Source of the DNA: Phallusia mammillata
Lineage: Eukaryota
Reading direction: 5' to 3'
Length of the DNA stretch: 64,000 nucleotides
Assembly: GCA_965637545.1 (NCBI GenBank)
Contig: OZ281497.1
Span: 24,056,001 to 24,120,000, forward strand
Every line of letters starts with the position of its first letter. Within the stretch, counting starts at the first letter, position 1. The position numbers and the translations under genes were made by a program. Below the pieces are notes generated by a model. The model was given only the letters and a program-made list of their open reading frames with translations. It was not told the origin of the DNA and did not search any database. Shown in pieces: positions 1 through 60,534 of this stretch.

Positions 1-1093
1 GTAGTGGTCTCTGGAACATAAGATAAATATACGTTATTTTGGAAGAACCACGTTTTACAATGATTTGTCCGGTTTTTCCATTATTTTGCTAAATTAGTCT
101 CAAAAAACGTTTCTGTTAGGTTTCATTGGATTGGCCTGGATGTTAAAAGTGTTTTTTTAACTGCCCTAAAGAAACCCTACACCAGTGGTTCCCAACCGGG
201 GAGGAATTCCTCCCCAGGGAGGAATTTTATGAGTTCAGGGGAGGAATTTCATAAAAACTGTAAAAAATTAACATTGGAAATGTTACAGAATATTTTTGTT
301 TTTACATTATTATGTCCATTATAATTTGGACCCGGTTCACATTTGGAACCCGTTACAAAATTCTGAAATGGACATCCCTAATTATAAGGTCTATTTCAAA
401 TTGCTATAATATTTATGTTATATTTGTTTTTCCTCTTATGGGGAGGAATGAATAGTTCGAAATGGGCAAAGGGAGGAATGTAACAAAAAAGGTTGGGAAC
501 CACTGCCCTACACAGAAGCAGGTTGAAACAGTGTATACTGTGTGCAGCTTAATCAGCATTTTCTTAACATTTTCGTTATACCTACTTCCTTGAGCTGGAG
601 GTTCATTGTTGTAAATTGAAACAGATTCTATGTCTGCTATTTGGGTTGTGTCTGAAATAACAAGAAAACTGAATTGTTAGTTTCTATGCAGCAGACTGCA
701 AACTCTCATGTCATAATCATAATAAACGTCCCGCTTTTTATGTATATTTGTTTTGCTTACAAACTGTTCAGTTTTGGAAAAGATCGTGTTTAAATGTAAT
801 AAAATCTATTTGAAGAAACGACATACAAGAAGCAAATTTCGACTAAATTTTTGCCAAACCCCAATGAAAATATCTTTGCCAAAAATCACTGCAAAACAAC
901 TAATTGGCACCATTTGGTTGTGATGTTTAATCATATATATTTCTATAATGTAAAGTCAAAGTAAATAACATGTCATTTTACCGTAGATGAACGGGTTTGT
1001 CGTGGCCAAATCGTCATTCTCATTTTCCGATGAAGTATTTCCCATATATCTACAGGTATGTAAAATCAAAACCACAAAAAATGTCAACTTTAT
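1..1093 (-). pseudogene. S0: partial chimeric membrane-protein gene (S-type exon 1 and stalk exon joined to L-type exon 3), continuing beyond the left edge; start codon appears mutated to ATA
   Basis: Exon 982-1093 reads (I)KLTFFVVLILHTCRYMGNTSSENENDDLATTNPFIY with G|gtaaaa donor and aligns with S exon 1 MKLAICVVIILH; the position of the S ATG is ATA (1091-1093) and an in-frame ATG lies at 1045. Exon 586-651 (ttatttcag|..TTQIADIESVSIYNNEPPAQG..|gtagg) matches the S stalk exon. An exon starting at 10 (tgttccag|AGACCACT) matches L exon 3. Confidence 0.6.
183..505. mobile_element. hAT-type MITE, 323 bp
   Basis: Perfect 15-bp TIR CAGTGGTTCCCAACC / GGTTGGGAACCACTG; 8-bp TSD CCCTACAC at 175-182 and 506-513. 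Confidence 0.9.
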
Positions 1094-2041: not shown

Positions 2042-4284
2042 CTATATCGGTATAGGGGCTGGTGGGCGGTCATATTGGCAAATTTCATCAGGATTATGTC
2101 TTGTTTCGTTGCTAGTTTTCATTGGAATTTCATACACCGATGGGCAAATTTCATTAGGATTAGGTTTTGTTTCGTTGCTAGTTTTCATTGGAATTTCATA
2201 CACCGACTCTTCAACTGCATTCGGCTTGGTCTGATTTATATCTGCGACTTTGTTTAGTTGTTTGTTGGACCTGCAAATGCAAAAAACCTGCTTGAGATAT
2301 TTTTTAAATAAAAATTGAATATTCTTTACAAAACATTGTATGAGCTGCATCTCATAAGTGCGAATTGGTGACAGGTTCTGAAAGGTCGATATGGAAACGT
2401 TGGTTAAAGAGCAACGGTGTAATTGTATATTTAATCTAAATTCTACACCAGGGCTTTATATCCAATATAGAGTATATTTAAAATAAATCAATGCATTTTG
2501 CAAGCAATTCCCCACCAAAATAAAAAATAACAAAATAGTTCGTTGTAGATTTTGGTTGAAGTTTTCTATTTTACCTTTTCCTGTCCCAGTAAAACACAAC
2601 AATCAGGAAAACAAGAACCAGAAAGAAAAATCCTGCCACGGCGCTTGGAACTGCAACTGCTACCAATCGGTATTCATTTGCTAAAACCAAGTGTTGTAAT
2701 GTTAGCTGGAATTGTTAATCATTAAGTAGATGTGCCCTATGTGGAGACCGTCTTATGCCACAGGGACTATATGCAATGTTATTGGTATTATTTTTTAGAG
2801 ACATGCAGGATTTTAAAGTAGACTATACTATAGTTTAGGCGTGCTACCAAATTCAGTCATGCTATTGTTTCAATAGAAAATTTGCCACCATAAAAAATTC
2901 CCGTGCTACCAACGTCAATCATGCTATTGTTTCAATCGAAAGTTTGCCTCTATTCAAAGATTCCAATTAAAGAATGAAGTTAACTAATAAATAGCACTCG
3001 AAGCTTGCTGTAAACAATGCACCATAAGATCAACAAACTGGAACACCATAGCCCGGCTACAAAGCCCACATGGTTAAAGTCTTGTCATTATCTGCATTTA
3101 TGAGACCGTATATTTGCTACAGCAGGTTAGCCTACATGAGTGTAACTTAATTCTTTGTTATTGTTATTGCTTTGTACTTAAATTGTTTAAATGATTACTG
3201 TTACTTACTTGCTTTGGTTGGAGTTGGATTGTTATGAGTTGAAATGGTTCCTGTTTTCATTGTTTTCGTGCCTTGCGTAAAACAAAGTCAAGCGTCAATC
3301 TTATGTAGCAGCACAAAATCAATGGGTGTAAAATAGTGATTATTTACATTTAAAACTATAACCAGTATAAATTCAGTTTGGGTCTCTAACTTCTTGACTC
3401 TTACATCTCGGGGTGTTATCAGTAAAACAATGACCTACATAAACTTAAAAAGCTTTTTTTTAATTTTGAATGCTTCTGCAAACCCCTGTTTTATTATCAC
3501 TAACTAATTAAAAAGTTTAAATTGATTATGTCATTGTTTTTGGTCATCGTTTTCCTCGCAAACTTTTAAATGGTCATTTGTAAACAGTTTTGTGTTTAAA
3601 ACTAAGGTATGCGCTCAGTGCACGAATAATTCCTGCAACCTACTTTCTTTAGCCAGGAGAGGATTGTTAGCAGTTGAAACGAATCCTGTTTCCATTATTT
3701 AGTTTGTGCCTTCTGTGGTTTCTGAAATAACAAACAATGTCGATCTTTATAGGCACACAAAAACTAAATGCTTAAAATAGTGATTATTATTCATTTTTGA
3801 AAACAATACAGTTCAGGTCGATGTTTGTGTCTGAATTTCTTGACAATTACGAGTCCAAATTTGTTCACAAGCCTTTGTACTCTAAATAATGTCCCAGATT
3901 TTACAACTTTTGAAAATATTTTTTTAAACGGTTATTTAAAACTAACAAAATCTACATTAGAAAAGCATACAAGAAACAAACATCAGATAATGTTTGTAAA
4001 ACCTTGCTTAATGTTGTTGTTTTTTCCCCAAAAACCGTTGCTATAAAATCCATTTACATCATCGATCTTTATCTGCGATAGTTTCATTGTTATTGTTGCT
4101 ATTACGTCAAGCAATATGAATGTCAAACTAAAAAAATATATTTCTTTTTACCATAATAGTCGTAATAGTTGTTGTCTCCGGGTTCATCATCAAACTCGTA
4201 ATTTCCAGATCCTACCCCAGAGTAATAAACAGCCACAGATGAGGAAATATGCAAAATTATAGCAACACAGATAGCCAACTTCAT
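2042..4284 (-). pseudogene. S1: small Tyr-rich single-pass membrane protein; nonsense codon in skippable stalk exon 2a, duplicated YEIP motif
   Basis: Exons 4152-4284 (MKLAICVAIILHISSSVAVYYSGVGSGNYEFDDEPGDNNYYDYY), 3644-3721 (TAA at 3699-3701 where S2-S5 have CAA), 3209-3271 (TKTMKTGTISTHNNPTPTKA), 2575-2680 (TM: NEYRLVAVAVPSAVAGFFFLVLVFLIVVFYWDRK), 2042-2270 (tail). All GT-AG. Exon 2a is phase 1-1, so skipping it restores the frame. Confidence 0.75.
2077..2208 (-). repeat. 66-bp in-frame tandem duplication in S1 cytoplasmic exon
   Basis: Two copies of SVYEIPMKTSNET(K/R)(P/H)NP(N/D)EIC(P/Q); ggcaaatttc at 2077 and 2143. Confidence 0.95.
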
Positions 4285-5727: not shown

Positions 5728-8700
5728 TTAACATGGACCGCCGACGCTGGATGGAACTTTTGGAAGGGGAAAAGCAGGTCTGTCAAATGGACAAGTTTGT
5801 TCAGTGTCAGGTCCATTGTGGTAGCGTTTTTTCTCAAACACCGGAACTTCGTAAATTGGTTCTTCAGTTTCGGCTGGAGCTTCAGCTCTTGCGTTATTTA
5901 CAGGCCATGGGTTTCTCCTGTAACGTTCCATGTTGGCACTGCAAATTAAAAAAAAATGATTGCAACCGTGAATAAACCCTAAACCTAAAATTACATTAAT
6001 GACACTTCTTTGTGTTACATAGTTTCCTTTTGGTGACGTTTGCCATGAAATGTGAAAAGGTGGTTAGACAGAATATCAATTTTGGTTATTTTATATAAGC
6101 CTCAAAATAGTGATTTTTAACCTGTGGTAACCTTGTAAAATCAGTAACTAAGTTATATAGTTCTCAAATCCCTTTCATTATAGTTAATGATTTCGCATCT
6201 CGTCACCCCTTACATTGGTTCCTCGGCAAATTGTGGGATGGCGTGAACTTGAGGTGCTAAGTTGAAGACTGGTACCGGGTCTGTGCTATTGGGTGCTCTA
6301 TTCGCCCTGCAAATGCAATACATGTGTGAAAAGGAAATTTTTAAAGCCATACATCTCACCCAAATTGTTTGTACAAGTTGTATTAAAAATTGTGTTGGTT
6401 GCAATGCAATTTCACAAATCCTAAATGAGAGTTTCTAACTTTTGTCTATACGCTCTTAAGCCAACGATCACAACATCGACTGCAAAGGCGCGCAAAAATT
6501 CCATCATTGGTTACTGAGTTAGGGACATGAAAAGTTACAAAATGTGACAAAAAACTCCCTTTCGGCCAAAAATCACGTTTTGTAGCGGGCGATAGAGAAG
6601 TCCAATTGGGCTCTAAATGTGCACATGCGTTAAAGTTGATTATATCAGTTATCCTAATCTTGCTGTGCGTACGGTCAGCAGTTCTTATTCCTTAAACGTG
6701 CAAATGTTTGGAGCACCCGATAGCAGCAGGTACGTTTCTGGTTTAAGTAAAGTTCTTCAGAACATCTGGCCTAGTTTAACTACAACGTAATCACCCAACT
6801 GTTTTCGTTGTTGGTTACCATTCCTTTTAGCAAAGTTTGCTTTTTTACCTTCTTCTCTTCCGGCAAAGCACAACGATTACGATCACAAGAACAATGAGAA
6901 GGATTCCTCCCACGGAACATGAGATTGCAATTATCAACGTCTGGTCATCTATTAAAGTTGAAACGTTCGTTAGTGATTACAATTGATAAATTTAAGGAAA
7001 AAGGCACAATCTGAATAGAGCAGGGCAATGTCATTTCAATACCAAGGACAAGTCGCAGACACATGACACGTAAATTTGAAAACGTTTTGTATTATTAGTA
7101 TTTTTTACTGCTTACTAGTTTGAGGAGCTCTTACGGTGGTCTCTGGAACATGAGAAAATAAATGTTATTTTAGAACAGTGGTCGGCAACCGCAGATCCGC
7201 GGCCCACTGCGACGAGTTCGTTACCGGGCTGTATAATTTTTCGGGTTAAATGCTTTAAAACATTTTGCCCATATATCTCAGGATGATAAACTAATAAAAT
7301 TTTACTTTCAAAAGCGGCCGGCAGAGCAAAAAAGGTTGCCACACCTTGTTTTAGAAGAACCGCGTTTATTAATGATTTTTTTGTTTTTCCATTTTTTTTG
7401 CTAAGTTTGTCTCAAAAACGATTTTGCTACGTTTCATTGGATAGACCTTGACGTTGAAAGTGTTTTTTTGACAACTGCTTTCAAAAAATTTCAGTTTACC
7501 ACGTTTTTCAAATACAAACCAAATCTTGTTCGTTTCATTGGACTGCGTCTAAACCAGTGGTTCTTAACCGGTGGGAAATTTAATGTTTTCAGAGGGAAAT
7601 TATGTAAGTCAGGTAACCAAACTCGGGGCCCAAGGATCGAACCCGGCTTTGAATTAGTCGTTGAAAGTTACTTTCCTAAAAAATTTTCCGAAACAACATG
7701 TTAGATTAATTTTTAACCTAGTTTTACAAGACGCCTAAAAATACAAGGCCGTTTGTTACATCACATACATGTCTGATAGTATCAATGACTGTGCTATTGC
7801 GCGCGAATAAAGGCCTTTTCTTTGTTGATTGTGATGCAATAAATGACTATTGCAAGCAGAGGAAACTCTATAATATTCCATAAGCTTTATTCTCTCATAG
7901 AAGCACTATTTAAACTGAATAAGATTGTAGTATATAACTTTGGGGTTCCAGACCAAATCGCTTCACAAAATTATTTCATTTAAAGAATATTTTTTTTGTT
8001 AACGGCACAAAACATCATTATAAAAATAACAAAGGGAAAAATTCAAACTTGGTGATTGACTTTAGTGGGAAACCACACCAAAGAGGTTAAGAACCACTGG
8101 GATAGACCTTGATACTGAAAGTGTTTTTTTTTTCACAACTGTTTTTAAAAAATTTCAGTTTACCACGTGTTTCAAATACAAACCAAATATGATATTGCTC
8201 GGAGTCTAGCAAACGACTTTTTGTTTTTTAAACAAAATTGTATGAATTTTTTTTTAGTATGAATCCGTAATTACCTTTAGAGTCCGTGGTTGTCCCTGGA
8301 GTAGTAAATGTGTTTGGACGAATATTTCAAAAACATAGAGGAAAAACAATGATTGATATTCAATGATGTTTTTGCAACAACACTTATGGAATTATGTGAG
8401 ACAGTTAACACATTGAAAGCCATTTCGTAGCAAGACACAGTTTTTTTTTAAGTTTTTTTTTTAAGGTTTCGATTTTCAAATACGGTTTTGTTAATGTCAA
8501 TCTTAACCCATATGTAAAAACAAACGATATAAGCAAGAAAAGGGAAAAAATGTTATGCAAATCTGTTTTACCTTTAAGAGTTCTTTGGCAGATATATCTA
8601 GCACTTGATGGACATAACGATGCGCTTATCTCCGAATAACTAGTGGGAGATGATTTCGAAATTTTGCTGCAATAGTTATTCCCAGTTCGAACATAAAACT

Positions 8701-9629: not shown

Positions 9630-10192
9630 ATGTACAGTGTCGAATTTTAAGCTGTAAAACACGCGAAAATGCATAGGATTTTCGACCAATATCAGCAACT
9701 ACCTATAACTTGTTTTTTTCAAGTGGTTTGTGTAACAATGTTCAAGGAGTAGAGATTTTCGTTTTTGTGCTGATCCGAGCCGTCGCAGCTTTATGAACGT
9801 TTTTATCGTTAAGAGAGTTGTCAGCGGTCCTTAAGTTGCGTTCTGGACCCAAAAGTGCAAGCCGGCAACCCGACTCGCACTCGATTATAAAAAATACAAA
9901 GTTGGAACCAGGCCTGAAATTTGGTAAAAATGCGGCTAAAATGCCGAATGTAAACACAGGTCCAAATCAAGATCGTTTTATTACAACTTATGTCTGAACT
10001 CAACCCAAATGCGTAAATCCTGGCCCGACTTACAACTCTGCTTTATTTAAATTTGACAAGTTAGTTATTTTAAGTGTGCTGTTTTATCAACAATATTTCT
10101 GTTATCTCCTTCGTACCATGCACCATCGACTTGTCTAAATAGCAAAGCTTCCCGTTCGTAAACATAACTGAATTAAATATATTGATCTAAAG

Positions 10193-10899
10193 CAGGGGCG
10201 GGCAACTTGTCCAGTCGGCGGGCCTGATATGGAAAAATGAAGTACTTGGCGGGCCGGATTCGTGAATCGATACATTAATCGCGTATTTCTCCAGTGATTT
10301 AAAACGGATTTTTGACCACATAAAATTATTCACCACAGCAAATTTAATGCATACACCACAGACTTAGATACTGGTGAAACACTAACTAGGCTAGTAAGGC
10401 TACACGTGTGGAAACAAAGGAAGCCGTGAAAGCAGGCCACACACAAGGTTGGCAGTTATGTCGTAACAATGGATGTATGGTGCAATGGTAACAACGGCGG
10501 GAAAGTTCTTTTGTTCTCGGGGAGCGTTACTGTTTGTTACAACCAGGTTTTTTTTTAAGGTTTGGTTTGGGTGACCGCTAAGTAGTTTTAAGAGACCGCA
10601 AGTGTTTCATTTAAATACCAAAAAATAGCCATATTTGCTTAAACGAATTATTTATTAGGCTACTGGCAAATTTTGGGAAACCGCTGGAGAAATTTGGGGG
10701 ACCGTTTCGGTCCCCCAAAACACCTTAAAAAAACACTGGTTACAACTATAATTTGACGTAGTAAGCAAGTAGTGGGGGATTCGGCAGACTGTGGCCGCGG
10801 GCCACGTTATATCATGTAAGACCAGAAACTGTCTGCGGGCCGCTCAAAATCCCGTCGCGGGCCGGATCCGGCCCGCGGGCCGTATGTTGCCCGCCCCTG
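10193..10899. mobile_element. hAT-type non-autonomous element, 707 bp, unique to the L1 upstream region
   Basis: 14-bp TIR CAGGGGCGGGCAAC / GTTGCCCGCCCCTG; perfect TSD ATCTAAAG at 10185-10192 and 10900-10907; empty site (single atctaaag) upstream of L2, L3 and L4. Confidence 0.92.
10544..10738. mobile_element. 195-bp hAT-type MITE nested in the 707-bp element
   Basis: TIR CAGGTTTTTTTTTAAGG / CCTTAAAAAAACACTG; perfect TSD GTTACAAC at 10536-10543 and 10739-10746. Confidence 0.88.
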
Positions 10900-15253: not shown

Positions 15254-16803
15254 TTAAAAACTCTTTCTTGGTATAGGGGCGGGTGGGCGATCATATTGGC
15301 AAATTTCCTCAGGATTAGATCTTGTTTCGTGGCTAGTTTTCATTGGAATTTCATACACCGACTCTTCAACTGCATTCGGATTGGTCTGATTTATATCTGT
15401 GGCTTGGTTAGGTTGTTTGTTGGACCTGCAAATGCAAAAAAACTCTTTGAGATTTTTTTTTTGAAACTGAAAACTGAATATTCTTTACAAAACATTGTAT
15501 GAGCTGCATCTCATGACTGCGAAATCGTATCGGGTTCTGAAAAGTCGATATGGAAACGTTGGTTAAACAGCAACGGTGCAATTGTTTATTTAAAGTAAAA
15601 CTTCAGGCCAGGGCTTTATATTCACCATAAAGTATATTCAAAATGAATCAACGCATTTTGCAGGCAATTTCCCACCAAAATAATAAAAATAAAACAACAA
15701 CAAAGTAGTTCGTTGTAGATTTTGGTTGAAGTTTGCTAGTTTACCTTTTCCTGTCCCAGTAAAACACAGCAATAAGGACAACAAGAACCAGAAAGAAAAA
15801 TCCTGCCAAGGCGCTTGGAACTGCAACTGCTACCAATCGGTATTCATCTGCTGAAACGTGTGGTGATGTAGCTAGGAATTGTTAATAATTGAATGTTCCC
15901 TATGTGGAAAACGTCTTAACCCCTGGGGATGAATACAGTGCCATTGGAATTATACTTTTGTTAACATGCAGGATTTTAAAGTAGACTATAATAAAGTTTA
16001 GGCGTGCTACCAACGTCAATCATGCTATTGTTTCAATCGAAAATTTGCCTGCATGAAAAGATTCCATTTAAAGACTGACGTTGACTAATAAATGGCAGTC
16101 GAGGTTAGCTGCCAACAATGCTCTATCAGATGGATAACAGTAGATAGGCTGCAAAACCCATATGGTCACAGTCTTGTTACTAGCTGCACTTATGATACCT
16201 TATAGGCTACAGAAGGTTACCCTACATGATTGTAGCCTAATTCTTTATTATTGTTATTGCACTGTAATCAAATTGTTTATTAAACGATTACTGTTACCTA
16301 CTTGCTTTGCTGGGAGTGGGATTGTGATGAGCTGAAACGAATCCTGTTTCCATTATTTGGTTTGTGCCTTCTGTGGTTTCTGAAATAACAAACAAAGTCG
16401 ATCTTTGCAGGCACACAAAAACTGAGTGCTTAAAATAGTGATCAAGTCTTTTTTTAAACGGCTTTGTATTTAAAACTAACAAAATCTATATTAGAAAAAT
16501 GTCACGAAGCAAACATTGGATATTTTTTGCAAAAACTTGTTTACATTTTTTTGCTATCAAAAAACATTGCTATAAAACCCATGCAGATCAATATTTAATT
16601 GTGGTAGTTTCTTTGCTATTATTGCTTTTACGATAAGCAACATGAATGTCAAACTACATAAAATATTTCTGTTTACCATAATAGTAGTTGATGTCTCCGG
16701 GTTCATCATCAAACTCGTAATTTACAAATCCTACCCCAGAGTAATAAACAGCCACAGATGTGGAAATATGCAAAATTATAACAACACAAATAGCCAACTT
16801 CAT
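15254..16803 (-). CDS. S2: small Tyr-rich single-pass membrane protein, 160 aa, 4 exons
   Basis: Exons 16677-16803, 16302-16379, 15745-15850, 15254-15425 give MKLAICVVIILHISTSVA-VYYSGVGFVNYEFDDEPGDINYYYETTEGTNQIMETGFVSAHHNPTPSKATDEYR-LVAVAVPSALAGFFFLVLVVLIAVFYW-DRKRSNKQPNQATDINQTNPNAVEESVYEIPMKTSHETRSNPEEICQYDRPPAPIPRKSF*; 483 nt, open. Confidence 0.85.
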
Positions 16804-18150
16804 TTTGTGTTCAGTAGGCAATATGCAAAAACCACTTTCTGAAGAAAAATAGGTCCAAAAAAGGTTGTGAAACACTAAGCAGGAGCCCCAAAACGCGCTT
16901 CAAAACTATAACTAATATGTAGTTAGTTTCTTTTTTAAGGTTTAATTTGTAGTTTAATTAAATCAAAACCTTTAAAACGGTGTAGCTGCAGCGTGTTTAG
17001 GAATTATCCTCAATTCTGTCCTTAACTATTTTTGCACACCATAAGATTTCAACTTTGCGCAGCTGTTTCTAGGCGATGGTTCAGTGCAATTTTGTAGCTA
17101 TGTGTTCTTTCACCAAGCGAACTATAAGGCTATGAACAATATGTTTTGTTTTTCTATGCTTGACGCTTACAAAAAATGCTTATACGTTTTATAACGTAAA
17201 ACTTTCTATAATAACTGTGTGAAAATTGCTTTTTTCGGCTATACTGAAAGCGACAACTTCTAACTATATCATCCATGCAACACTATTTGCCAGTTTTCAT
17301 CACCCAATAAAGCTGGATTGTGCGCTCACAGTTTGCCGAAACTATTTATTGTACTTTATGATGACTCAAGTCAATTCATGTAGTTTCGAAACTTGACAGG
17401 TTAATTGTTCATTATACACTGTGTATGACCTTAGTCTGTTTTCAAAGGAAGTCTCGACTTACTTTTTGTACATCCCACCAACCTCATAAATATTTTTAAT
17501 ATCACAGTAAAACTGCCAGGAAAACGTTTAATTTTGTCTAGAAGTTATTTATTGCAAATTTTAAAATATGTGTAAAAATTGCAAGGTCATGTAAGTTGCA
17601 CAAGAATATCACTAACTTTTTGCGTTTGTAAAAAGTGACTGTGGTTTATAATTCCCGCACAGCTTCTTTTGTTAATACACCACATAAAAAACGAAGGTAA
17701 CAAAAACAAAAATGAAACATTTAGCATACAAAAAGTAATGCTTATGCCACTTTTGTTTGAACCAAAAATACATCTCTCAACAGTTTTCGATGGGAATATG
17801 TCATACTCAAACGCAGCGGAACTGTACACAAAGCATTCACACATGCAAAAAAACAACAACAATTGCTTAGGGCTAAAACGTTGGAAAGAGCAATTCAGTA
17901 AAGGTACCCAGTTTATGGATGAAAGAGGAAATACATTTATAATAATTATTGGGTTAGACTAGGACCCTTTGAAGTGTAAGGGCCCACACAAAACCATGGG
18001 ACTGACGAATATTACCATTTCAAAAAGAAGCTAGGCAACTAATAGAAGACTCCATTGTGGCTTTAGTTGAAAAATATTGCTGCTCATTGTCACATGATTT
18101 CATTTTTTTGACAAATTTAGAGTTCACAAGAAGGCTAGTTTCGACTGCAA

Positions 18151-21100
18151 TTAACATACACCACCGACACTGGATGCAACTTTTGGAAGAGGAAAAGCAG
18201 GTCGGTCAAAAGGATAAGTTTGTTCAGTATCAAGTCCATTGTGGTAGCGTTTTTTCTCAAACACCGGAACTTCGTAAATTGGTTCTTCAGTTTCGGCCGA
18301 AGCTGCAGCTCTTGCGTTGTTTATTGGCCATGGGTTTCTCCTATAATGTTCCTTGTTGGCACTGCAAATTAAAAAAATAACTGTAACCTTGAATGAACCC
18401 TAACCTTAAAAGTGCATGAACTACATTTGTTTGCATTACACATATGTCATAAAATGAAAAAAAGGTGGTTAAACAAAATATCGGTCATGGTTATTCAATA
18501 TATTCTACAAATCATTGTTTTTGACCCTTTGGCAACCTTTTTAAATAAGTCACTGGTTGTCATATCCTGAGTTTTAGCATATTTAAGTATGCTTATCCAT
18601 TAACGCTAATCATTTTAGCATCCCAGTAGCACCCCTTACATTGGTTCCTCGGCAAATTGTGGGATGGCGTGAACTTGAGGTGTTAAGTTGAAGACGGGTA
18701 CCGGTTCTGTGCTATTGGGTGCTCTATTCGCCCTGCAAATGCAAAACATGTGTGAAACGATTTTTTTTAAACACTATAAAATTCACCCTAATTGTTTGTA
18801 TAAGTTGCATTAAGTTAAAAATCGTGTTGGTTGCAATGCAATTTCACAAATCCTAAATGAGAGTTTCTAACTTTTGTCAATACGCTCTTAAGCCAACGAT
18901 GACAATGTCGACTGCAAAGGCGCGCAAAATTTCCATCATTGGTTACTGAGTTAGGGACATGAAAAGTTACAAAATGTGACAAAACACTCCCTTTCGGCCG
19001 AAAATCACGTTTTGTAGCGGGCGATAGAGAAGTCCAATTGGGCTCTAAATGTGCACATGCGTTAAAGTTGATTATATCAGTTATCCTAATCTTGCTGTGC
19101 GTACGGTCAGCAGTTCTTATTCCTTAAACGTACAAATTTTTGGAGCACCAGATAGCAGCAGGTACATTTCTGGTTTAAGCAAAGTTCTTCAGAATATCTG
19201 ACCTTGTTTAACTGCAACATAATCACCCAACTGTTTTCGTTGTTGGTTACCCTTCCTTTTAGCAAAGTTTGCTTTTTTACCTTCTTCTTTTTCGGCAAAG
19301 CACAACGATTACGATCACAAGAACAATGAGAACGATTCCTCCCACGGAACATGAGATTGCAATTATCAACGTCTGGTCATCTATTAAAGTTGAAACGTTC
19401 GTTAGTGATTACAATTGATAAATTTAAGCAAAAAGACATAATATGTATTAAGCAGGACAATGCCATTTCAATACCAAAGACAAGCCGCAGAAACATAACA
19501 CGCAAATTTAAAAACTTTTGTATTGTTAGTATTTTTTACTGCTTACTAGTTTGAGGAGCCTTTACAGTGGTCTCTGGAACATAAGAAAATAAATGTTATT
19601 TTAGAACAGTGTTCGGCAACCGCAGATCCGCGGCCCACTGCGACGAGTTCGTTAACGGGCTGTATAATTTTTCGGGTTAAATGCTTTAAAACATTTTGCC
19701 CATATATCTCAGGATGATAAACTAATAAAATTTCACTTTCAAAAGCGGCCCGCAGAGCAAAAAAGGTTGCCACACCTTGTTTTAGAAGAACCGCGTTTAT
19801 TAATGATTTTTCTGTTTTTCCATTTTTTTGCTAAGTTTGTCTCAAAAACGATTTTGCTACGTTTCATTGGATAGACGTTGATGTTGAAAGTGTTTTTTTG
19901 ACAACTGCTTTCAAAAAAATTCAGTTTACCACGTTTTTCAAATACAAAGAAAAAAATAATATTGCTCGTTTCATTGGACTGCGTCTAAACCAGTGGTTCT
20001 TAACCGGTGGGAAATTTAATGTTTTCAGAGGGAAATTATGTAAGTCAGGTAACCAAACTCGGGGCCCAAGGGTCGAACCGGGGTTTGAATAAGTCGTTGA
20101 AAGTTACTTTCCTAAAAATTTTTCCGCAACAACATGTTAGATTAATTTTTAACCTAGTTTTACAAGACGCCTAAAAATACAAGGCCGTTTGTTACATCAC
20201 ATACATGTCTGATAGTATCAATGACTGTGCTATTGTGCGCGAATAAAGGCCTTTCCTTTGTTGATTGTGATGCAATAAATGACTATTGCAAGCAGAGGAA
20301 ACTCTATAATATTCCATAAGCTTTATTCTCTCATAGAAGCACTATTTAAACTGAATAAGATTGTAGTATATAACTTTGGGGTTCCAGACCAAATCGCTTC
20401 ACAAAATTATTTCATTTAAAGAATATTTTTTTTGTAAAAATAACAAAGGGAAAAATTCAAACTTGGTGATTGACTTTAGTGGGAAACCACACCAAAGAGG
20501 TTAAGAACCACTGGGATAGACCTTGATACTGAAAGTTTTTTTTTTTTCACAACTGTTTTTAAAAATTTTCAGTTTACCACGTGTTTCAAATACAAACCAA
20601 ATATGATATTGCTCGGAATATAGCAAACGACTTTTTGTTTTTTAAACAAAATTGTATGAAATGTTTTTTTAGTATGAATCCGTAATTACCTTTTGAGTCC
20701 GTGGTTGTCCCTGGAGTAGGAAATGTGTTTGGACGAATATTTCAAAGACATAGAGGAAAAACAATGATTGATATTCAATGATGTTTTTGCAACAACACTT
20801 ATGGTATTAAGTGAGACAGTTAACGCATTGAAAGCCATTTCGTAGCAAGACACAGGTTTTTTTTAAGGTTCGGTTTGGGTGACCGCTAAGTAGTTTTAAG
20901 ATACCGCAAGTGTTTCATTTAAATACCAAAAATAGCCATATATGCCTAAACAAATTATTGTAGTTGCAAGTCCAAATTTTGGGAAACCGCTGGAGAAATT
21001 AAAAACACGTTAAAAAAACACTGGCAAGACCTATGCGTTTTTGTTTTGACACAAAAAACAAAACGATTTTCAAATACGGTTTGTCAATGTCAATCTTAAC

Positions 21101-22224
21101 CCATATGTAAAAACAAACGATATAAGCAAGAAAAGGAAAAAAAAACGTTATGCAAATCCGTTTTACCTTTAAGAGTTCTTTGGCAGATATATCTAGCACT
21201 TGATGGACATAACGATGCGCTTATCTCCGAATAACTAGTGGGAGATGATTTCGAAATTTTGCTGCAATAGTTATTCCCAGTTCGAACATAAAACTCTTTT
21301 TCTGTAAGCACAAGTTTGTGGGTTTGAACAATACGATATGCACCAAAGTTGTAACAGGTAATAAACCTGGATATCAGACAAACCCAGCCCACATCCGTTT
21401 TCTACAAAACATGAATTGCTCTCAAAGCTTTAATGTAATCAAAATAATAATAATAAAAACTCGGTTGGTTTAGAGTTGGATGAGGGTGGAACTTATGGGC
21501 CACAACTCGAAGGCACAAGCTTGAAACCCGTGTAGTTTTGCAAAACCCAAACCATATCCAATTTGGCGGACACAACCTGTTCAACCACAATCAAAAAAGT
21601 AATTGTGGCAGAGTATGAGTTCAGACCCGGTAATTGAGAAACATTAAGCCGAAAATTAAACCACAGGTTCGAATTCTGCAACTCCCAGAACATCTAAAAA
21701 CCGTTTTTTAGTTGACCCACATTATTTTTCACCACTATTTGAGGCTGGCACAAAATTTGACAAACATATTTTTTTTATTAAATATTTGTTAGCACGCATC
21801 AAAAATAACTTAATTTATGAGAACGAAACCGGAATTTATGAGAACAAAAAATTAGCTAAATTAGCTGAATAGGATTTGCGTTTACAAACTGGTAACAGTT
21901 TAAATTTTGAAAAGTCTCATAGCTGCACAATTGCATTAATTTCACCAAACCGGAACCAGTAAATAAAGGTTACTTACTGGAAGAAAAAATAAAAATAAGT
22001 GTTGGCTTTGGAAGAAACCCTTGAAGAAAGTGAAGAAGGCGATTTGATTGTACACTCGCTATCTTTGCATTTAGCTTTGAGCATTCTTTCTCAGCTTGAT
22101 TATACGAATAGACTTCGTCGGACCCAATATAATACTCGTTTCCATCAAAAGAATGCCAAGTTTGGGCGGAACATGAATGACAAATTCCAACCACGAAAAG
22201 CATTAGGTGTATATTGTTTGCCAT
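18151..22224 (-). CDS. L2: type-I transmembrane C-type lectin-like receptor, 270 aa, 6 exons
   Basis: Exons 21978-22224, 21167-21301, 19547-19573, 19281-19380, 18640-18732, 18151-18361; open frame, tail ends EEPIYEVP..EQTYPFDRPAFPLPKVASSVGGVC*. Confidence 0.85.
20853..21023. mobile_element. hAT-type MITE (same family as 10544-10738) in intron 2 of L2-L4
   Basis: TIR CAGGTTTTTTTTAAGG / TTAAAAAAACACTG; TSD GCAAGACA/GCAAGACC; copies at 32694-32864 and 44713-44883; only a left-end stub in L1 (~8437-8470); empty site in L5 (~53390). Confidence 0.85.
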
Positions 22225-27138: not shown

Positions 27139-28678
27139 TTAAAAACTCTTTCTTGGTATAGGGGCGGGTGGGCGATCATATTGGCAAATTTCCTCAGGAT
27201 TAGATCTTGTTTCGTGGCTAGTTTTCATTGGAATTTCATACACCGACTCTTCAACTGCATTCGGATTGGTCTGATTTATATCTGTGGCTTGGTTAGGTTG
27301 TTTGTTGGACCTGCAAATGCAAAAAAACTCTTTGAGATTTTTTTTTTCAAACTGAAAACTGAATATTCTTTACAAAACATTGTATGAGCTGCATCTCATG
27401 ACTGCGAAATCGTATCGGGTTCTGAAAAGTCGATATGGAAACGTTGGTTAAACAGCAACGGTGCAATTGTTTATTTAAAGTAAAACTTCAGGCCAGGGCT
27501 TTATATTCACCATAAAGTATATTCAAAATGAATCAACGCATTTTGCAGGCAATTTCCCACCAAAATAATAAAAATAAAACAACAACAAAGTAGTTCGTTG
27601 TAGATTTTGGTTGAAGTTTGCTAGTTTACCTTTTCCTGTCCCAGTAAAACACAGCAATAAGGACAACAAGAACCAGAAAGAAAAATCCTGCCAAGGCGCT
27701 TGGAACTGCAACTGCTACCAATCGGTATTCATCTGCTGAAACGTGTGGTGATGTAGCTAGGAATTGTTAATAATTGAATGTTCCCTATGTGGAAAACGTC
27801 TTAACCCCTGGGGATGAATACAGTGCCATTGGAATTATACTTTTGTTAACATGCAGGATTTTAAAGTAGACTATAATAAAGTTTAGGCGTGCTACCAACG
27901 TCAATCATGCTATTGTTTCAATCGAAAATTTGCCTGCATGAAAAGATTCCATTTAAAGACTGACGTTGACTAATAAATGGCAGTCGAGGTTAGCTGCCAA
28001 CAATGCTCTATAAGATGGATAACAGTAGATAGGCTGCAAAACCCATATGGTCACAGTCTTGTTACTAGCTGCACTTATGATACCTTATAGGCTACAGAAG
28101 GTTACCCTACATGATTGTAGCCTAATTCTTTATTATTGTTATTGCACTGTAATCAAATTGTTTATTAAACGATTACTGTTACCTACTTGCTTTGCTGGGA
28201 GTGGGATTGTGATGAGCTGAAACGAATCCTGTTTCCATTATTTGGTTTGTGCCTTCTGTGGTTTCTGAAATAACAAACAAAGCAGGCACACAAAAACTGA
28301 GTGCTTAAAATAGTGATCAAGTCTTTTTTTAAACGGCTTTGTATTTAAAACTAACAAAATCTATATTAGAAAAATGTCACGAAGCAAACATTGGATATTT
28401 TTTGCAAAAACTTGTTTACATTTTTTTGCTATCAAAAAACATTGCTATAAAACCCATGCAGATCAATATTTAATTGTGGTAGTTTCTTTGCTATTATTGC
28501 TTTTACGATAAGCAACATGAATGTCAAACTACATAAAATATTTCTGTTTACCATAATAGTAGTTGATGTCTCCGGGTTCATCATCAAACTCGTAATTTAC
28601 AAATCCTACCCCAGAGTAATAAACAGCCACAGATGTGGAAATATGCAAAATTATAACAACACAAATAGCCAACTTCAT
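27139..28678 (-). CDS. S3: small Tyr-rich single-pass membrane protein, 160 aa
   Basis: Exons 28552-28678, 28187-28264, 27630-27735, 27139-27310; essentially identical to S2. 10-bp intronic deletion just upstream of the exon 2 acceptor (~28282). Confidence 0.83.
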
Positions 28679-38983: not shown

Positions 38984-40533
38984 TTAAAAACTCTTTCTTG
39001 GTATAGGGGCGGGTGGGCGATCATATTGGCAAATTTCCTCAGGATTAGATCTTGTTTCGTGGCTAGTTTTCATTGGAATTTCATACACCGACTCTTCAAC
39101 TGCATTCGGATTGGTCTGATTTATATCTGTGGCTTGGTTAGGTTGTTTGTTGGACCTGCAAATGCAAAAAAACTCTTTGAGATTTTTTTTTTCAAACTGA
39201 AAACTGAATATTCTTTACAAAACATTGTATGAGCTGCATCTCATGACTGCGAAATCGTATCGGGTTCTGAAAAGTCGATATGGAAACGTTGGTTAAACAG
39301 CAACGGTGCAATTGTTTATTTAAAGTAAAACTTCAGGCCAGGGCTTTATATTCACCATAAAGTATATTCAAAATGAATCAACGCATTTTGCAGGCAATTT
39401 CCCACCAAAATAATAAAAATAAAACAACAACAAAGTAGTTCGTTGTAGATTTTGGTTGAAGTTTGCTAGTTTACCTTTTCCTGTCCCAGTAAAACACAGC
39501 AATAAGGACAACAAGAACCAGAAAGAAAAATCCTGCCAAGGCGCTTGGAACTGCAACTGCTACCAATCGGTATTCATCTGCTGAAACGTGTGGTGATGTA
39601 GCTAGGAATTGTTAATAATTGAATGTTCCCTATGTGGAAAACGTCTTAACCCCTGGGGATGAATACAGTGCCATTGGAATTATACTTTTGTTAACATGCA
39701 GGATTTTAAAGTAGACTATAATAAAGTTTAGGCGTGCTACCAACGTCAATCATGCTATTGTTTCAATCGAAAATTTGCCTGCATGAAAAGATTCCATTTA
39801 AAGACTGACGTTGACTAATAAATGGCAGTCGAAGTTAGCTGCCAACAATGCTCTATAAGATGGATAACAGTAGATAGGCTGCAAAACCCATATGGTCACA
39901 GTCTTGTTACTAGCTGCACTTATGATACCTTATAGGCTACAGAAGGTTACCCTACATGATTGTAGCCTAATTCTTTATTATTGTTATTGCACTGTAATCA
40001 AATTGTTTATTAAACGATTACTGTTACCTACTTGCTTTGCTGGGAGTGGGATTGTGATGAGCTGAAACGAATCCTGTTTCCATTATTTGGTTTGTGCCTT
40101 CTGTGGTTTCTGAAATAACAAACAAAGTCGATCTTTGCAGGCACACAAAAACTGAGTGCTTAAAATAGTGATCAAGTCTTTTTTTAAACGGCTTTGTATT
40201 TAAAACTAACAAAATCTATATTAGAAAAATGTCACGAAGCAAACATTGGATATTTTTTGCAAAAACTTGTTTACATTTTTTTGCTATCAAAAAACATTGC
40301 TATAAAACCCATGCAGATCAATATTTAATTGTGGTAGTTTCTTTGCTATTATTGCTTTTACGATAAGCAACATGAATGTCAAACTACATAAAATATTTCT
40401 GTTTACCATAATAGTAGTTGATGTCTCCGGGTTCATCATCAAACTCGTAATTTACAAATCCTACCCCAGAGTAATAAACAGCCACAGATGTGGAAATATG
40501 CAAAATTATAACAACACAAATAGCCAACTTCAT
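38984..40533 (-). CDS. S4: small Tyr-rich single-pass membrane protein, 160 aa
   Basis: Exons 40407-40533, 40032-40109, 39475-39580, 38984-39155; essentially identical to S2/S3. Confidence 0.83.
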
Positions 40534-48800: not shown

Positions 48801-48939
48801 GCAGACAATTGTTTATCCATCACCAACCTAACTTAAAATGTGCAGTTAATCAGAAGTAATGAACACAAAACAACGACATGGCCAAGAAATCCACAACATT
48901 TGATATTTTTTCTAAACAAGACAAACAGGCAGCTTTACA

Positions 48940-49070
48940 GTCTATGTAGTTCGATAGAGCGCGAGTCCCGGAAAGGCTCCTGTCGTGGGTTCGAATCTCA
49001 CCGCAGGCTAGATTTTTCTACTCTACGCCTTGCCGCAAGGGAATGCTTGGGAGATAGGCTTGTATACGTT
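48940..49070 (+). mobile_element. tRNA-derived SINE head (longer version of the element seen as a foldback in the three units)
   Basis: A-box-like TAGTTCGATAG, B-box GGTTCGAATC, then the same body (ctcaccgcaggctagatttttctactctac..gccgcaagggaatgcttgg) as 13615-13685. Confidence 0.6.
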
Positions 49071-49288
49071 CAACCCTGTAGCGACCCCTGTCGCTTATGT
49101 ATTTCTTACGAAGCGTTACGTTTGCCTTTTTCCTATTGTGCGTGTGTTTTGCCTTTTTCGTTTGGTGCGCACGTTTGCTATGCGTTTGGTTTGACGCGTC
49201 ATTCTATTATTTGCGATTGAAATAAACGGACGCTACATTTGGTGACCCCAAATCCAGAAACGACTTTTCTGGAGTTCATTAAATAAGC

Positions 49289-49971
49289 ATGTCAACCGAC
49301 GGAGACACCCAGCATGCTGTTGCGATCAAACTTCCGACTTTCTGGTCAGCAGAACCACGTGTTTGGTTCCAACAAATTGAGGCACAATTTGCATTAAAAA
49401 ACATAGTTGCAGACCAAACAAAGTTTTATTATATAGTGTCCGCACTTGATGAAGATACAGCAAAGCGTATAATCGATTTATTGGAAGATCCTCCAGCAGA
49501 AAACAAGTTCGCATCAATTAAACAAAGACTGCTGGATTCTTTTGATTTATCAAATCAAGAAAGAGCAGCACGCCTGCTAAACATGGCACCTCTCGGTGAC
49601 AGAAAACCTTCTGAACTTATGGACGAATGCTAGCCCTAATGGGAAAACACCAGTCTTGCTTTCTATTCCAACATTTGTTTTTACAACATATGCCGGAAGA
49701 TATTCGTATTGTCCTCGTTTAAAAAGATTTGGAAAACCCTCGCGATTTGGCAAAACAGGCGGATAGGTTATGGCTTGTTCGGACGAGCAACACAGACTAC
49801 ACCATTGCCAAATTAAGAAAGCAGAGGCAAGCTAAATCTACAACACTTTTCAACAGCAACGACAGTAGTCAGTATTGTTTTTACCACCGGCGTTTTAAAC
49901 AAGATGCACGACAATGTCGTCCACCATGTGCTGCACAACAGGGAAACGCCAAGGCCGGTTGTCCACAATGA
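49289..49971 (+). pseudogene. gag: Gypsy gag, frameshifted
   Basis: KLPTFWSAEPRVWFQQIEAQF..TKFYYIVSALD gag signature; frameshift near 49628 and a nonsense codon near 49720; C-terminal CFYHRRFKQDARQCRPPC Cys/His motif. Confidence 0.88.
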
Positions 49972-51365: not shown

Positions 51366-51848
51366 AAGTAACCCACACAGTGGCCAGTTAGAAAGCTAGC
51401 TGGGACGTGGAATCAGAACCAAAGAGTTTTGTATTCTACAATAGTAATTTGTCGCACTCAACGGAAGCGGAACTGTACACAAAGCATTCACCCATGCAAA
51501 AAAAAAAAAAATTGCTTAAGGCTAAAACATTGAAAAGCGCAATTTAGTAATGGTACACAGTTTATGGATCAAAGAGGAAATACATCTATAATAATCATTG
51601 CGTTACATTAGGACCCACTGAAGTGCAAGGGCCCATACATAGCCATGGGTTGACAAATATTACCATTTGAAAAACAAGCTAGGCAACAAATAGAAGACTC
51701 CATTGTGGCTTTAGTTGAAAAATATTGCTGCTCATTGTCATATGACTTATATTATTTTGACAAATTTAGAGTTCACAAGGAGGCTAAAAAGTTTCTTTAT
51801 CAGCAATATTTTATCTCCAGTAAGGCCCCGCGGATAAATAGACTGCAT

Positions 51849-58437: not shown

Positions 58438-60534
58438 CTATATTGGTATTGGGGCTGGTGGACGGTCATATTGGCAACTTTCATTAGGATTAGGTCTTGT
58501 TTCGTGGCTAATTTTCATTGGAATTTCATACACTGACTCTTTAACTGCATCCGGCTTGTTCTGATTTATATCTGCGACTTTGTTTGGTTGTTTGTTGGAC
58601 CTGCAAATGCAAAAAACCTGCTTGAGATTTAAAAAAAAATGAATATTCTTTGCAAAATATTATATGAGCTGCATCTCTTAGCTGCCAATTGGTATCAGGT
58701 TTTGAAAAGTCGATATGGAAACGTTGGTTAAACAGCAACGGTGCAATTGTCTATTTAATGCAAAACTCTAGGCCAGGGCTGTATATTCGAAATAAATCAA
58801 TACATTTTGCAGGCAATTCCCCACCAAAAAGAAAAAAGAAAAAAAAAATAGTTTGTTGTAGATTTTTGTTGAAGTTTGCTAGTTTACCTTTTCCTGTCCC
58901 AGTAAAACACGGCAATAAGGACAACAAGAACCAGAAAGAAAAATCCTGCCACGGCGCTTGGAACTGCAACTGCTACCAATCGGTATTCATTTGCTAAAAC
59001 CAAGTGTTGTAATGTTAGCTAGGAATTGTTCATCATTAAGTAAATGTGCCCTATGTGGAGACCGTCTGATGCTACAGGGACTATACGCAATGTTATTGCT
59101 ATTATTTTTTAGAAACATGCAGGATTTTAAAGTAGACTGTACTATAGTTCATAGGCGTGCTACCAAATTCAGTCATGCTATTGTTTCAATAGAAAATTTG
59201 CCTCCATAAAAAATTCGCGTGCTACCAACGTCAATCATGATATTGTTTCAATCGAAAATTTGCCTCTATTCAAAGATTCGGATTAAAGAATGAAGTTGGC
59301 TAATAAATAGCACTCGAAGCTTGCTGTAAACAATGCACCATAAGATCAACAAACTGGAACACCATAGCCCGGCTACAAAGCCCACTTGGTTAAAGTCTTG
59401 TCAATATCTGCATTTATGAAACCGTATATATGCTACAGCAGGTTAGCCTACATGAGTGTAGCTTAATTCTTTGTTATTGTTATTGCTTTGTACTCAACTT
59501 GTTTAATTGATTACTGTTACTTACTTGCTTTGGTGGGAGTTGGATTGCTAGGAGCAGAAATGATTCCTGTTTTCTTTGTTATCGTGCCTTGCGTAAAACA
59601 AAGTCAAGCGTTAATCTCAAGTAGCAACATAAAATCAGTGCGTGTAGAATAGTGATTATTTACATTTAAAAATATCCAGTATAAATTCAGTTTGGGACTC
59701 TAACATTTTGACTCTTACATCTCAGGGTGTTGTCAGTAAAACAATGACCAACTAAACGCAAAAAGCCACTTTTTTAATTTTGAATCCTTCTGCAAACGCC
59801 TGATTTTGTCATTGTGTTTGGTCATTGGTTTTCTCCAAAACTTTTAAATGGTCATTTATAAAACCAAGTTTAAAATTAAGGTATGTGCTCATTGTACGAA
59901 TAATTTCTGCAACCTACTTTCTTTAGCCTTGTTAAAAGTTGAAACGGATTCTGTTTTCATTATTTGATTTGTGCCTTCTGTGGTTCCTGAAACAACAAAC
60001 TAAATTACAGGCACACAAAAAGTGAGTGCTTAAAATAGTGATTATTCATTTTTCATAAAAAGGTCCAGTTAAGGCCGATATTTGGGTCACAATTTCTTGA
60101 CAATTACTACCTAAATTTGTATACAAGCCCTATTGGTGAACAATATCCCACATTAAAAAAACGTTTAAAAGTCTTTTTTAAAACGGTTTGTATTTAAAAC
60201 TAACAAAATCTACATTCGAAAAATATACACGAAGCAAACATTGAATATTTTTGCAAAACCTTGTTTAAATTTTTTGGTATAAGAAAAACCATTGCTTTAA
60301 AATCCATGCACATTATCATTTAATTGTGGTAGTTTCATTGTTATTATTGCTATTACGTCAAGCAACATGATTGTCAAACCACATAAAATATTTCTGTTTA
60401 CCAGAATAGTCGTAATAGTTGTTGTCTCCAGGTTCATCATCCAACCCGTAATTTCCAAATCCTACCCCAGAGTAATAAACAGCCACAGATGTGGAAATAT
60501 GCAAAATTAAAACAACACAAATAGCCAACTTCAT
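58438..60534 (-). CDS. S5: small Tyr-rich single-pass membrane protein, 177 aa, 5 exons (two stalk exons)
   Basis: Exons 60402-60534 (..VYYSGVGFGNYGLDDEPGDNNYYDYS), 59918-59986, 59525-59587, 58888-58993 (TM), 58438-58600 (..KESVYEIPM..CQYDRPPAPIPI*); 534 nt, open. Confidence 0.82.

What the first reader, a model, noticed from the sequence alone, without database searches (positions are those of the whole stretch)
16302..16803. S ectodomain looks like a PSGL-1-style sulfotyrosine/mucin ligand encoded next to a C-type lectin-like gene
Seen: after an 18-aa signal peptide the mature N-terminus is VYYSGVG(F/S)(V/G)NYEFDDEPGD(I/N)NYY(D)Y(Y/S), six or seven Tyr around an acidic patch with no Cys. 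A Thr/Ser/Pro-rich stalk and a TM follow, for ~55 aa of ectodomain in S2. This peptide differs among S1, S2-4 and S5. Established: Tyr in acidic context is the tyrosylprotein sulfotransferase substrate, Ser-Gly is a glycosaminoglycan attachment motif, and PSGL-1 uses N-terminal sulfotyrosines on a mucin stalk to bind the lectin domain of P-selectin. Inference: S may be the genetically linked ligand of L, or a sulfopeptide decoy or co-receptor.
Basis: partly seen in the sequence, partly recalled or inferred. Interest (0 to 1): 0.75.

Follow-up and report, generated by a model that had tools for sequence, protein, structure and literature searches.

The report
Small tyrosine-rich membrane protein beside lectin genes
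A sea-squirt gene array repeats a small membrane-protein gene whose exposed tip is a tyrosine-rich acidic peptide of the kind cells usually sulfate; the gene looks real, but nothing here shows that it is expressed, sulfated or bound by the lectin-like receptor next door.

Summary
On the minus strand, five copies of a 4-5-exon gene (S1-S5) sit in a ~12-kb tandem unit. Each encodes a signal peptide, a Cys-free tip (S2-4: VYYSGVGFVNYEFDDEPGDINYYY), a short Thr/Ser/Pro stalk, one membrane span and a ~57-aa tail.

- **The patch is not chance:** only these five stretches in the six-frame translation meet the Tyr/acid criteria, and none of 40 simulated windows does.
- **Sulfation context:** four or five Tyr per copy fit the sulfotransferase context. 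Y2 and Y3 do not.
- **Coding constraint:** all introns are GT-AG, exons are more conserved than introns, and all five exon indels keep the frame.
- **Weak points:** dN/dS is 0.5-1.2. S1 has an in-frame TAA. No RNA data set holds S, and three protein searches found no relatives.
- **Relation to L:** S and L share the tail motifs and exon layout, so they are paralogues.
- **Lectin fit:** L has no EPN/QPD/WND sugar-site motifs. L5 has no S downstream. S1 differs from S2-4 although the readable lectin exons of L1-L4 are 98-100% identical.

A sulfopeptide and mucin-like display protein is plausible (about 0.5). S as L's ligand is untested and unsupported (about 0.1).

The parts
16677..16803 (-). 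S2 exon 1: ATG, 18-aa signal peptide, 24-aa Tyr/acidic mature tip; ends in phase 1
   Evidence: Read directly. Model with a GT donor. Tyr context table.
16302..16379 (-). S2 exon 2: 26-codon stalk exon (ETTEGTNQIMETGFVSAHHNPTPSKA). It is a hybrid of the two stalk exons seen in S1 and S5.
   Evidence: AG/GT borders. Alignment shows a deletion joining e2a and e2b in frame.
15745..15850 (-). S2 exon 3: juxtamembrane TDEYR, membrane span and the DRK stop-transfer residues
   Evidence: AG/GT borders. Kyte-Doolittle mean up to 2.7 over residues 72-103.
15254..15425 (-). S2 exon 4: cytoplasmic tail with SVYEIP and CQYDRPPAPIP, then the stop codon
   Evidence: Motifs kept in S1 and S5 and shared with L tails.
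27139..28678 (-). S3 gene. Its four exons (28678-28552, 28264-28187, 27735-27630, 27310-27139) are identical to those of S2.
   Evidence: A 10-nt intron deletion lies just upstream of exon 2.
38984..40533 (-). S4 gene. Its four exons (40533-40407, 40109-40032, 39580-39475, 39155-38984) are identical to those of S2.
2042..4284 (-). S1 gene, five exons (4284-4152, 3721-3644, 3271-3209, 2680-2575, 2270-2042). Tip is VYYSGVGSGNYEFDDEPGDNNYYDYY. In-frame TAA at 3699-3701. A 66-nt in-frame duplication in the tail doubles SVYEIPMKTSNET.
58438..60534 (-). S5 gene, five exons (60534-60402, 59986-59918, 59587-59525, 58993-58888, 58600-58438), intact, 177 aa. Tip is VYYSGVGFGNYGLDDEPGDNNYYDYS.
586..1093 (-). 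S0: older relative. Exon 1 (1093-982) has ATA where S1-S5 have ATG. Its tip is acidic (SENENDD) with only two Tyr. Stalk exon at 651-586. The gene runs off the window.
   Evidence: Read.
21978..22224 (-). L2 exon 1: signal peptide and the N-terminal third of a C-type lectin-like domain
   Evidence: Pfam Lectin_C E=6.5e-4, profile positions 3-37, below the gathering score. PDB CLEC4F E=5.7e-4 and other lectin-like chains.
21170..21401 (-). L2 open frame for the C-terminal half of the lectin-like domain, ending in RYICQR. It is identical in L1-L4 and diverged in L5.
   Evidence: No Pfam hit on this piece. Its join to exon 1 is not resolved.
18154..19408 (-). L2 membrane-span exon (about 19408-19280) and two tail exons (about 18773-18639 and 18291-18154), with PIYEVP and FDRPAFPLP

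Best explanation
S1-S5 are copies of a lineage-restricted gene for a small type I membrane protein: 160 aa in S2-4 and 177 aa in S5.

After signal-peptide removal the protein exposes a flexible tip with no Cys and no N-glycan site. Its Tyr at positions 11 and 22-26 lie in the acidic, turn-rich context that Golgi tyrosylprotein sulfotransferase accepts. The tip is followed directly by Thr residues that could carry O-glycans.

The tip sits on a stalk built from one or two copies of a phase-1 exon. Recombination between these exon copies changes the stalk length.

The membrane span and the tail (SVYEIP, YDRPPAPIP) are shared by descent with the neighbouring lectin-like receptor L. S is therefore a lectin-less sister of L that keeps the same tail and carries an anionic peptide handle in place of a folded domain.

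Most likely it displays a sulfated, lightly glycosylated peptide to a partner that is not yet known, and signals through tyrosine phosphorylation of its tail.

Shown: gene structure, composition, coding constraint, paralogy with L. Inferred: sulfation, glycosylation, any binding, any signalling.
For: - Canonical GT-AG introns and kept frames in all five copies.
- Exon identity of 92-93% against intron identity of 83-88%.
- All five exon indels are in frame (6, 9, 9 and 66 nt, plus the exon fusion). Only about 30% of intron indels are multiples of three.
- The Tyr/acid patch is unique to the five S tips in the window and absent from 40 simulations.
- Four or five Tyr per copy have 2-4 Asp/Glu within 5 positions and no basic residue. 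There are no Cys and no N-x-S/T sequons.
- Context rules come from PMC6272617. The same paper lists CCR8 VTDYYYPDI as a sulfotransferase substrate.
- CCR5 is sulfated at adjacent Y14/Y15, next to O-glycosylated T16/S17 (PMC13731920).
- Cionin in a sea squirt carries two adjacent sulfotyrosines (PMC8149874).
- The DDEPGD core and 5 of the 6 tip Tyr of S2-4 are unchanged in S1 and S5; only the last is Ser in S5.
- Tail homology with L: BLASTP E=9e-6 and 5e-7, with ten invariant columns in the alignment.
- The same S variants are present in DNA contigs of three independent studies.
Against: - No RNA evidence. No RNA run holds words of the gene, and the one RNA-labelled run laid showed only a 34-nt repeat piece.
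- dN/dS is 0.63-1.19 for the ectodomain and 0.48-0.71 for the span and tail. Constraint is weak and there is no sign of diversifying selection.
- S1 has a premature stop, and S0 lacks its start codon.
- No relatives were found by two word searches or by a profile search of 1.84 billion proteins. Conservation of the Tyr patch outside this array is therefore unknown.
- S0, the only older relative seen, keeps the acidic patch but only two Tyr.
- No prediction tool or experiment for sulfation was available.
Confidence: 0.45

Rival explanations
1. S is a young by-product of birth-and-death evolution in the L family. It would be a lectin-less copy, or the ancestral tail gene, drifting towards loss. 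Its Tyr-rich tip would have no specific role.
For: - dN/dS is near 1 in the ectodomain.
- S1 has a nonsense codon, S0 has lost its start codon, and L3 has a broken membrane-span exon in the same array.
- No RNA support and no relatives.
- S2-4 are too recent to have decayed, at 99.3-100% identity.
Against: - All five exon indels keep the frame, and exons are 5-10 points more conserved than introns.
- The tail motifs and the DDEPGD/Tyr core are unchanged across S types that differ by 9-14% at synonymous sites.
- S5 is intact.
Confidence: 0.25
2. One reading: S is the genetically linked ligand, decoy or co-receptor of L. Its sulfated tip would bind L's lectin-like domain in the PSGL-1/P-selectin manner.
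For: - Tight linkage on the same strand, 1.35 kb apart.
- The Tyr cluster followed by Thr resembles the PSGL-1 tip, given as ATEYEYLDYDFL in PMC6272617.
- If S is paired with the L downstream of it, S5 lies next to the diverged L5 and S2-4 lie next to the near-identical L1-L3.
Against: - No EPN, QPD or WND motif in any frame of any L lectin region.
- L1-L4 have identical C-terminal lectin frames and 98-100% identical exon 1, yet S1 differs from S2-4.
- L5 has no S downstream.
- Linkage and block-wise similarity follow from tandem duplication of paralogues.
- There are only two independent contrasts, so no statistical power.
Confidence: 0.12
3. S is a signalling subunit that pairs through the membrane with L or another receptor, like the short-ectodomain adaptor chains of vertebrate immune receptors.
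For: A very short ectodomain and a tail with two conserved tyrosine motifs plus a proline-rich stretch. It is encoded next to a receptor.
Against: - No charged residue in the membrane span of S or L, and no ectodomain Cys for a disulfide-linked dimer.
- L carries the same tail itself, so it needs no adaptor.
- The tail motifs are YEIP and YDRP, not YxxL/I pairs.
Confidence: 0.08
4. The Tyr cluster is a substrate for oxidative chemistry known from sea-squirt blood cells and tunic (DOPA formation, dityrosine cross-links, halogenation) rather than for sulfation.
For: Only general knowledge that ascidians make DOPA-rich and halogenated Tyr peptides. Another note of this scan mentions a brominated blood-cell peptide (unchecked).
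Against: The acidic, turn-rich context is the sulfotransferase context (PMC6272617). The protein is membrane-anchored with a signalling tail, unlike secreted adhesive or tunic proteins.
Confidence: 0.05

Closest known systems
PSGL-1 (SELPLG), the P-selectin ligand
   Same: Type I membrane protein. It has a mature N-terminal cluster of Tyr among acidic residues with a Thr close by, on an extended Ser/Thr/Pro stalk whose length varies by repeat number.
   Different: No sequence homology found. The S stalk is 26-47 aa, not a long mucin domain. S has no ectodomain Cys. S has a longer tail with YEIP/YDRP motifs. The neighbouring lectin-like domain lacks the Ca2+/sugar motifs that selectins use.
Podoplanin, ligand of the lectin-like receptor CLEC-2
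   Same: A small mucin-like type I surface glycoprotein (PMC6386838) of about the same size, with an acidic motif next to O-glycosylated Thr. It is bound by a lectin-like domain that, from my own knowledge, lacks a canonical sugar site.
   Different: No Pfam podoplanin match on any S exon. No EDxxVTPG motif. Podoplanin is not known to rely on sulfotyrosine. Podoplanin and CLEC-2 are neither paralogues nor neighbours.
Sulfated N-termini of chemokine receptors (CCR5, CCR8)
   Same: Runs of adjacent Tyr after Asp/Asn: S2 has DINYYYE, and CCR8 has VTDYYYPDI (PMC6272617). CCR5 is sulfated at Y14/Y15, followed by glycosylated Thr/Ser (PMC13731920).
   Different: Those are tips of seven-span receptors that bind chemokines. 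S is a single-span protein. The likeness is compositional only.
Lectin-type receptors with dual-tyrosine tails noted elsewhere in this genome (s1-392393, s1-375385)
   Same: The theme of one family wired to different outer or inner modules, with short tails carrying two tyrosine motifs, in tandem arrays.
   Different: Those notes describe lectin-FN3 ectodomains paired with phosphatase or tail forms. Here the variant has lost the folded ectodomain altogether. Homology between those tails and this one was not tested.

Membership tests
Tyrosylprotein sulfotransferase substrates (functional class) | Asp/Glu within 5 positions of the Tyr, and no basic residue at -1 | tested here: met
   Y11 and Y22-Y24 (to Y26 in S1) have 2-4 acidic and 0 basic neighbours. 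Y2 and Y3 have none. The juxtamembrane DEY has Arg at +1. Rule from PMC6272617.
Tyrosylprotein sulfotransferase substrates (functional class) | Secretory-pathway exposure, with no nearby disulfide or N-glycan | tested here: met
   An N-terminal hydrophobic signal and one membrane span. The ectodomain has no Cys and no N-x-S/T.
Tyrosylprotein sulfotransferase substrates (functional class) | Sulfate actually present on the Tyr | not testable with these tools
   Needs mass spectrometry or an anti-sulfotyrosine antibody.
PSGL-1 / selectin-ligand type | Sequence homology to SELPLG | tested here: not met
   No Pfam family on any S exon. No relatives in the protein searches.
PSGL-1 / selectin-ligand type | Long, heavily O-glycosylated mucin repeat domain | tested here: not met
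   The stalk is one or two exons of 21-26 codons, with 38% Ser/Thr/Pro in S2. Glycosylation itself is untestable here.
PSGL-1 / selectin-ligand type | Partner lectin with a Ca2+/fucose site (EPN and WND motifs) | tested here: not met
   No EPN, QPD, EPD, EPS, QPN or WND in any minus-strand frame of the L1-L5 lectin regions. The L gene model is incomplete.
Podoplanin (Pfam PF05808) | Profile match and a PLAG motif (EDxxVTPG) | tested here: not met
   No Pfam hit at E up to 1. The motif is absent from the S proteins.
C-type lectin-like domain (for the neighbour L) | Match to the Lectin_C profile or to solved lectin-like domains | tested here: inconclusive
   Exon 1 matches profile positions 3-37 at E=6.5e-4, which is 20.8 bits against a 22.6-bit cut-off. 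It also matches CLEC4F, CLEC4A and LOX-1 chains. The C-terminal frame has the Cys spacing and RYICQR ending but no Pfam hit.
ITAM / ITIM-bearing immune receptor tails | YxxL/I pairs, or (S/I/V/L)xYxx(I/V/L) | tested here: not met
   The tail motifs are SVYEIP and QYDRPP, with Pro at +3.

The most novel reading that the evidence does not exclude
S and L form a cis-encoded pair. A lectin-like receptor and its own lectin-less sister, whose sulfated tip it binds, are duplicated together as a unit and use the same tail on both sides. This would give sea-squirt blood cells a private, expandable self-recognition or adhesion code.
Probability: 0.1. Interest if true: 0.75.

Novelty: new variant of a known kind. 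Interest (0 to 1): 0.4.

Why it matters
Sulfotyrosine peptides on short mucin stalks are a recurrent way to make high-affinity surface ligands in vertebrates. None is known from a tunicate membrane protein.

If S is expressed and sulfated, three things follow:
- This design would reach back to the sister group of vertebrates.
- It would show a folded lectin-like ectodomain and a bare anionic peptide exchanged on one signalling tail.
- It would offer a compact, testable candidate for a receptor-ligand or recognition pair in a gene array that is still duplicating.

If S is not expressed, the locus is an ordinary birth-and-death array with a compositional curiosity.

Tried and rejected
- **S exon 1 as a remnant of L exon 1** (YY-x-G resemblance to the first lectin strand). 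Local DNA and protein alignments were no better than shuffles: 161 of 500, 335 of 2000 and 1716 of 2000 shuffles reached the score. Rejected.
- **Relatives of S.** A word search with the S1 tail frame found none among proteins of about 75-240 aa. A word search with the exon 1 frame found none among proteins of about 40-128 aa. A profile of six S and L tails found none at E up to 0.001 in 1.84 billion proteins. The queries are short, so power is low. The full spliced protein could not be sent because it has no reference.
- **Pfam.** All S exons gave nothing meaningful. Ten frames of the L lectin region also gave nothing.
- **Rfam.** Nothing at gathering score in the whole window.
- **RNA evidence.** None of the listed RNA-labelled runs holds words of S. 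The one that was laid (X10) gave nothing.
- **Positive selection on the tip.** Not shown: dN/dS is 0.63-1.19 on 7-17 nonsynonymous changes.
- **A complete L gene model.** The phase at the end of L exon 1 does not fit the conserved frame of the next lectin-like piece, and L5 lacks the AG and GT sites used in L2. Left unresolved.
- **Earlier notes by sequence.** The look-up was blank.

Full report
**What the window is.** The DNA is about 35% G+C and intron-bearing. It is organised as a tandem repeat of about 12 kb, with start-to-start spacings of about 12.4-12.5, 11.9, 11.9-12.0 and 20 kb. Units 2-4 are 99.3-100% identical. Units 1 and 5 are mosaics of blocks ranging from 66% to 99.9% identity. 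Other agents of this scan call the genome a sea squirt, Phallusia mammillata. I did not verify that.

**The observation.**
- The finding's coordinates are exon 1, intron 1 and exon 2 of a minus-strand gene, S2.
- I built models for all five copies from the sequence. Every intron is GT-AG and every copy keeps its frame.
- S2, S3 and S4 have identical exons and encode 160 aa. The parts are an 18-aa signal peptide, the tip VYYSGVGFVNYEFDDEPGDINYYY, a 26-aa stalk exon, TDEYR plus a membrane span, and a 57-aa tail.
- Hydropathy shows only the two expected hydrophobic segments.
- The S1 tip is VYYSGVGSGNYEFDDEPGDNNYYDYY. The S5 tip is VYYSGVGFGNYGLDDEPGDNNYYDYS.
- The patch is not a composition accident. 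In the six-frame translation of the window, the only stop-free 24-aa windows with at least 6 Tyr, at least 5 Asp/Glu and no Lys, Arg or Cys are the five S tips. Forty Markov-simulated windows gave none.

- S1 and S5 have two stalk exons, both phase 1-1. In S2-4 a 384-435-nt deletion between homologous parts of those exons left one in-frame hybrid exon.
- S1 has CAA changed to TAA in its first stalk exon, at 3699-3701. It is truncated unless that exon is skipped, which the phases would allow.
- The S1 tail has a 66-nt in-frame duplication that doubles the SVYEIP motif.
- An older relative, S0, lies at the window's start. It has ATA in place of ATG, an acidic tip (SENENDD) with only two Tyr, and a homologous stalk exon.

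**Is it a gene?**
- *For:* Exons are 92-93% identical between S types, against 83-88% for introns. All five exon indels preserve the frame, while about 30% of intron indels are multiples of three. The tail motifs and the DDEPGD core are invariant. DNA contigs from three independent studies carry the same S variants, including the 6-nt YD insertion and the F-to-S, V-to-G and I-to-N changes. The types are therefore real features of the species.
- *Against:* dN/dS is 0.63-1.19 in the ectodomain and 0.48-0.71 in the span and tail. No listed RNA run holds words of the gene, and the one laid gave nothing. No relatives were found by two word searches or by a profile search of 1.84 billion proteins. 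Those queries were single exons, because a spliced protein has no reference here.

**Sulfation and glycosylation.**
- Published rules ask for acidic residues within 5 positions and no basic residue at -1 (PMC6272617).
- Y11 and Y22-24 (to Y26 in S1) have 2-4 acidic and no basic neighbours, plus many turn-forming residues. Y2 and Y3 have no acidic neighbour. The juxtamembrane DEY is followed by Arg.
- There is no Cys and no N-glycan sequon. SGVG fits the SGxG glycosaminoglycan motif (my own knowledge) but has no acidic residue close by.
- Precedents: CCR8 VTDYYYPDI is a sulfotransferase substrate (PMC6272617). CCR5 is sulfated at adjacent Y14/Y15, next to glycosylated T16/S17 (PMC13731920). The sea-squirt peptide cionin carries two adjacent sulfotyrosines (PMC8149874).
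- Sulfation is therefore plausible but unproven.

**Relation to L.**
- L lies 1.35 kb upstream of S on the same strand.
- Its first exon is the N-terminal third of a C-type lectin-like domain (Pfam E=6.5e-4; CLEC4F and others).
- A conserved frame ending in RYICQR supplies the C-terminal half. I could not join the two pieces in frame.
- The L tail shares with S the motifs (S/P)(V/I)YE(I/V)P and DRPxxPxP, the phase-2 end of the membrane-span exon, and the acceptor sequence of the next exon. S and L are therefore paralogues over the span and tail, which by itself explains their linkage. S exon 1 is not detectably related to L exon 1.

**Test of the ligand idea.**
- No EPN, QPD or WND motif occurs in any frame of any L lectin region. 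A selectin-type Ca2+/sugar site is absent. A protein-binding lectin-like domain, as in CLEC-2 with podoplanin, remains possible.
- L1-L4 have identical C-terminal lectin frames and 98-100% identical exon 1, yet S1 differs from S2-4.
- L5 has no S downstream.
- Pairing each S with the L downstream of it gives a congruent pattern: S5 with the diverged L5, and S2-4 with L1-L3. That is two contrasts, and it is what block duplication predicts anyway.
- Several copies are damaged: the S1 stop codon, and a 34-nt deletion in the L3 membrane-span exon.

**Verdict.** S is most likely a real, fast-evolving, lineage-restricted small membrane protein with a probable sulfotyrosine tip and the same tail as its lectin-like neighbour. 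The PSGL-1 analogy describes its layout, not its ancestry. The proposed S-L binding has no support here and some features against it.

Noticed in passing
window 31155-31249: The L3 membrane-span exon lacks 34 nt present in L2 and L4 (ttccgtggg...cttgtg). This shifts the frame and removes half of the span, so L3 looks broken.
   Followed up: partly
window 3699-3701: S1 has an in-frame TAA (CAA in S2 and S5) in its first stalk exon. All stalk exons are phase 1-1, so skipping that exon would restore the frame.
   Followed up: partly
window 2042-2270: The S1 tail exon carries a 66-nt in-frame tandem duplication that doubles the SVYEIPMKTSNET motif.
   Followed up: yes
window 982-1093: S0 exon 1 has ATA where S1-S5 have the start ATG. 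The nearest upstream ATG is out of frame and runs into a stop after 16 codons.
   Followed up: partly
window 8455-8470 and 10192-10898: Unit 1 lacks 193 nt that units 2-4 have (20871-21063). It carries a ~700-nt insert upstream of L1 exon 1 that includes a copy of 20853-21000.
   Followed up: no
window 48600-51450: Between L5 and L4 there is no S gene. Instead there is a stretch of 41-43% G+C, unlike the 33-37% elsewhere, which is probably an insertion. It accounts for much of the 20-kb spacing of unit 4.
   Followed up: no
window 16804-16850 (and the same place in all copies): A pyrimidine tract followed by AG (tttttcttcag) lies about 37 nt upstream of the S start codon in all five copies. 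It is a candidate acceptor for a 5' UTR intron or for trans-splicing.
   Followed up: no
window 15740-15867 and 15292-15419: In DNA contigs of three studies, the summed contig depth over S exons 3 and 4 is several times that of the flanks. This hints at more family members elsewhere in the genome. The tool warns that this depth is not a copy number.
   Followed up: no
window 21368-21402 vs 53640-53700: L5 lacks both the AG acceptor and the GT donor that border the short lectin exon reading in L2. The phase at the end of L2 exon 1 also does not fit the conserved RYICQR frame. The L gene model is unresolved.
   Followed up: partly
window 16765: A synonymous variant (att to atc in the signal peptide) is seen in contigs of all three DNA studies but in none of the five S copies of the window. 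It is either an allele or a further paralogue.
   Followed up: no
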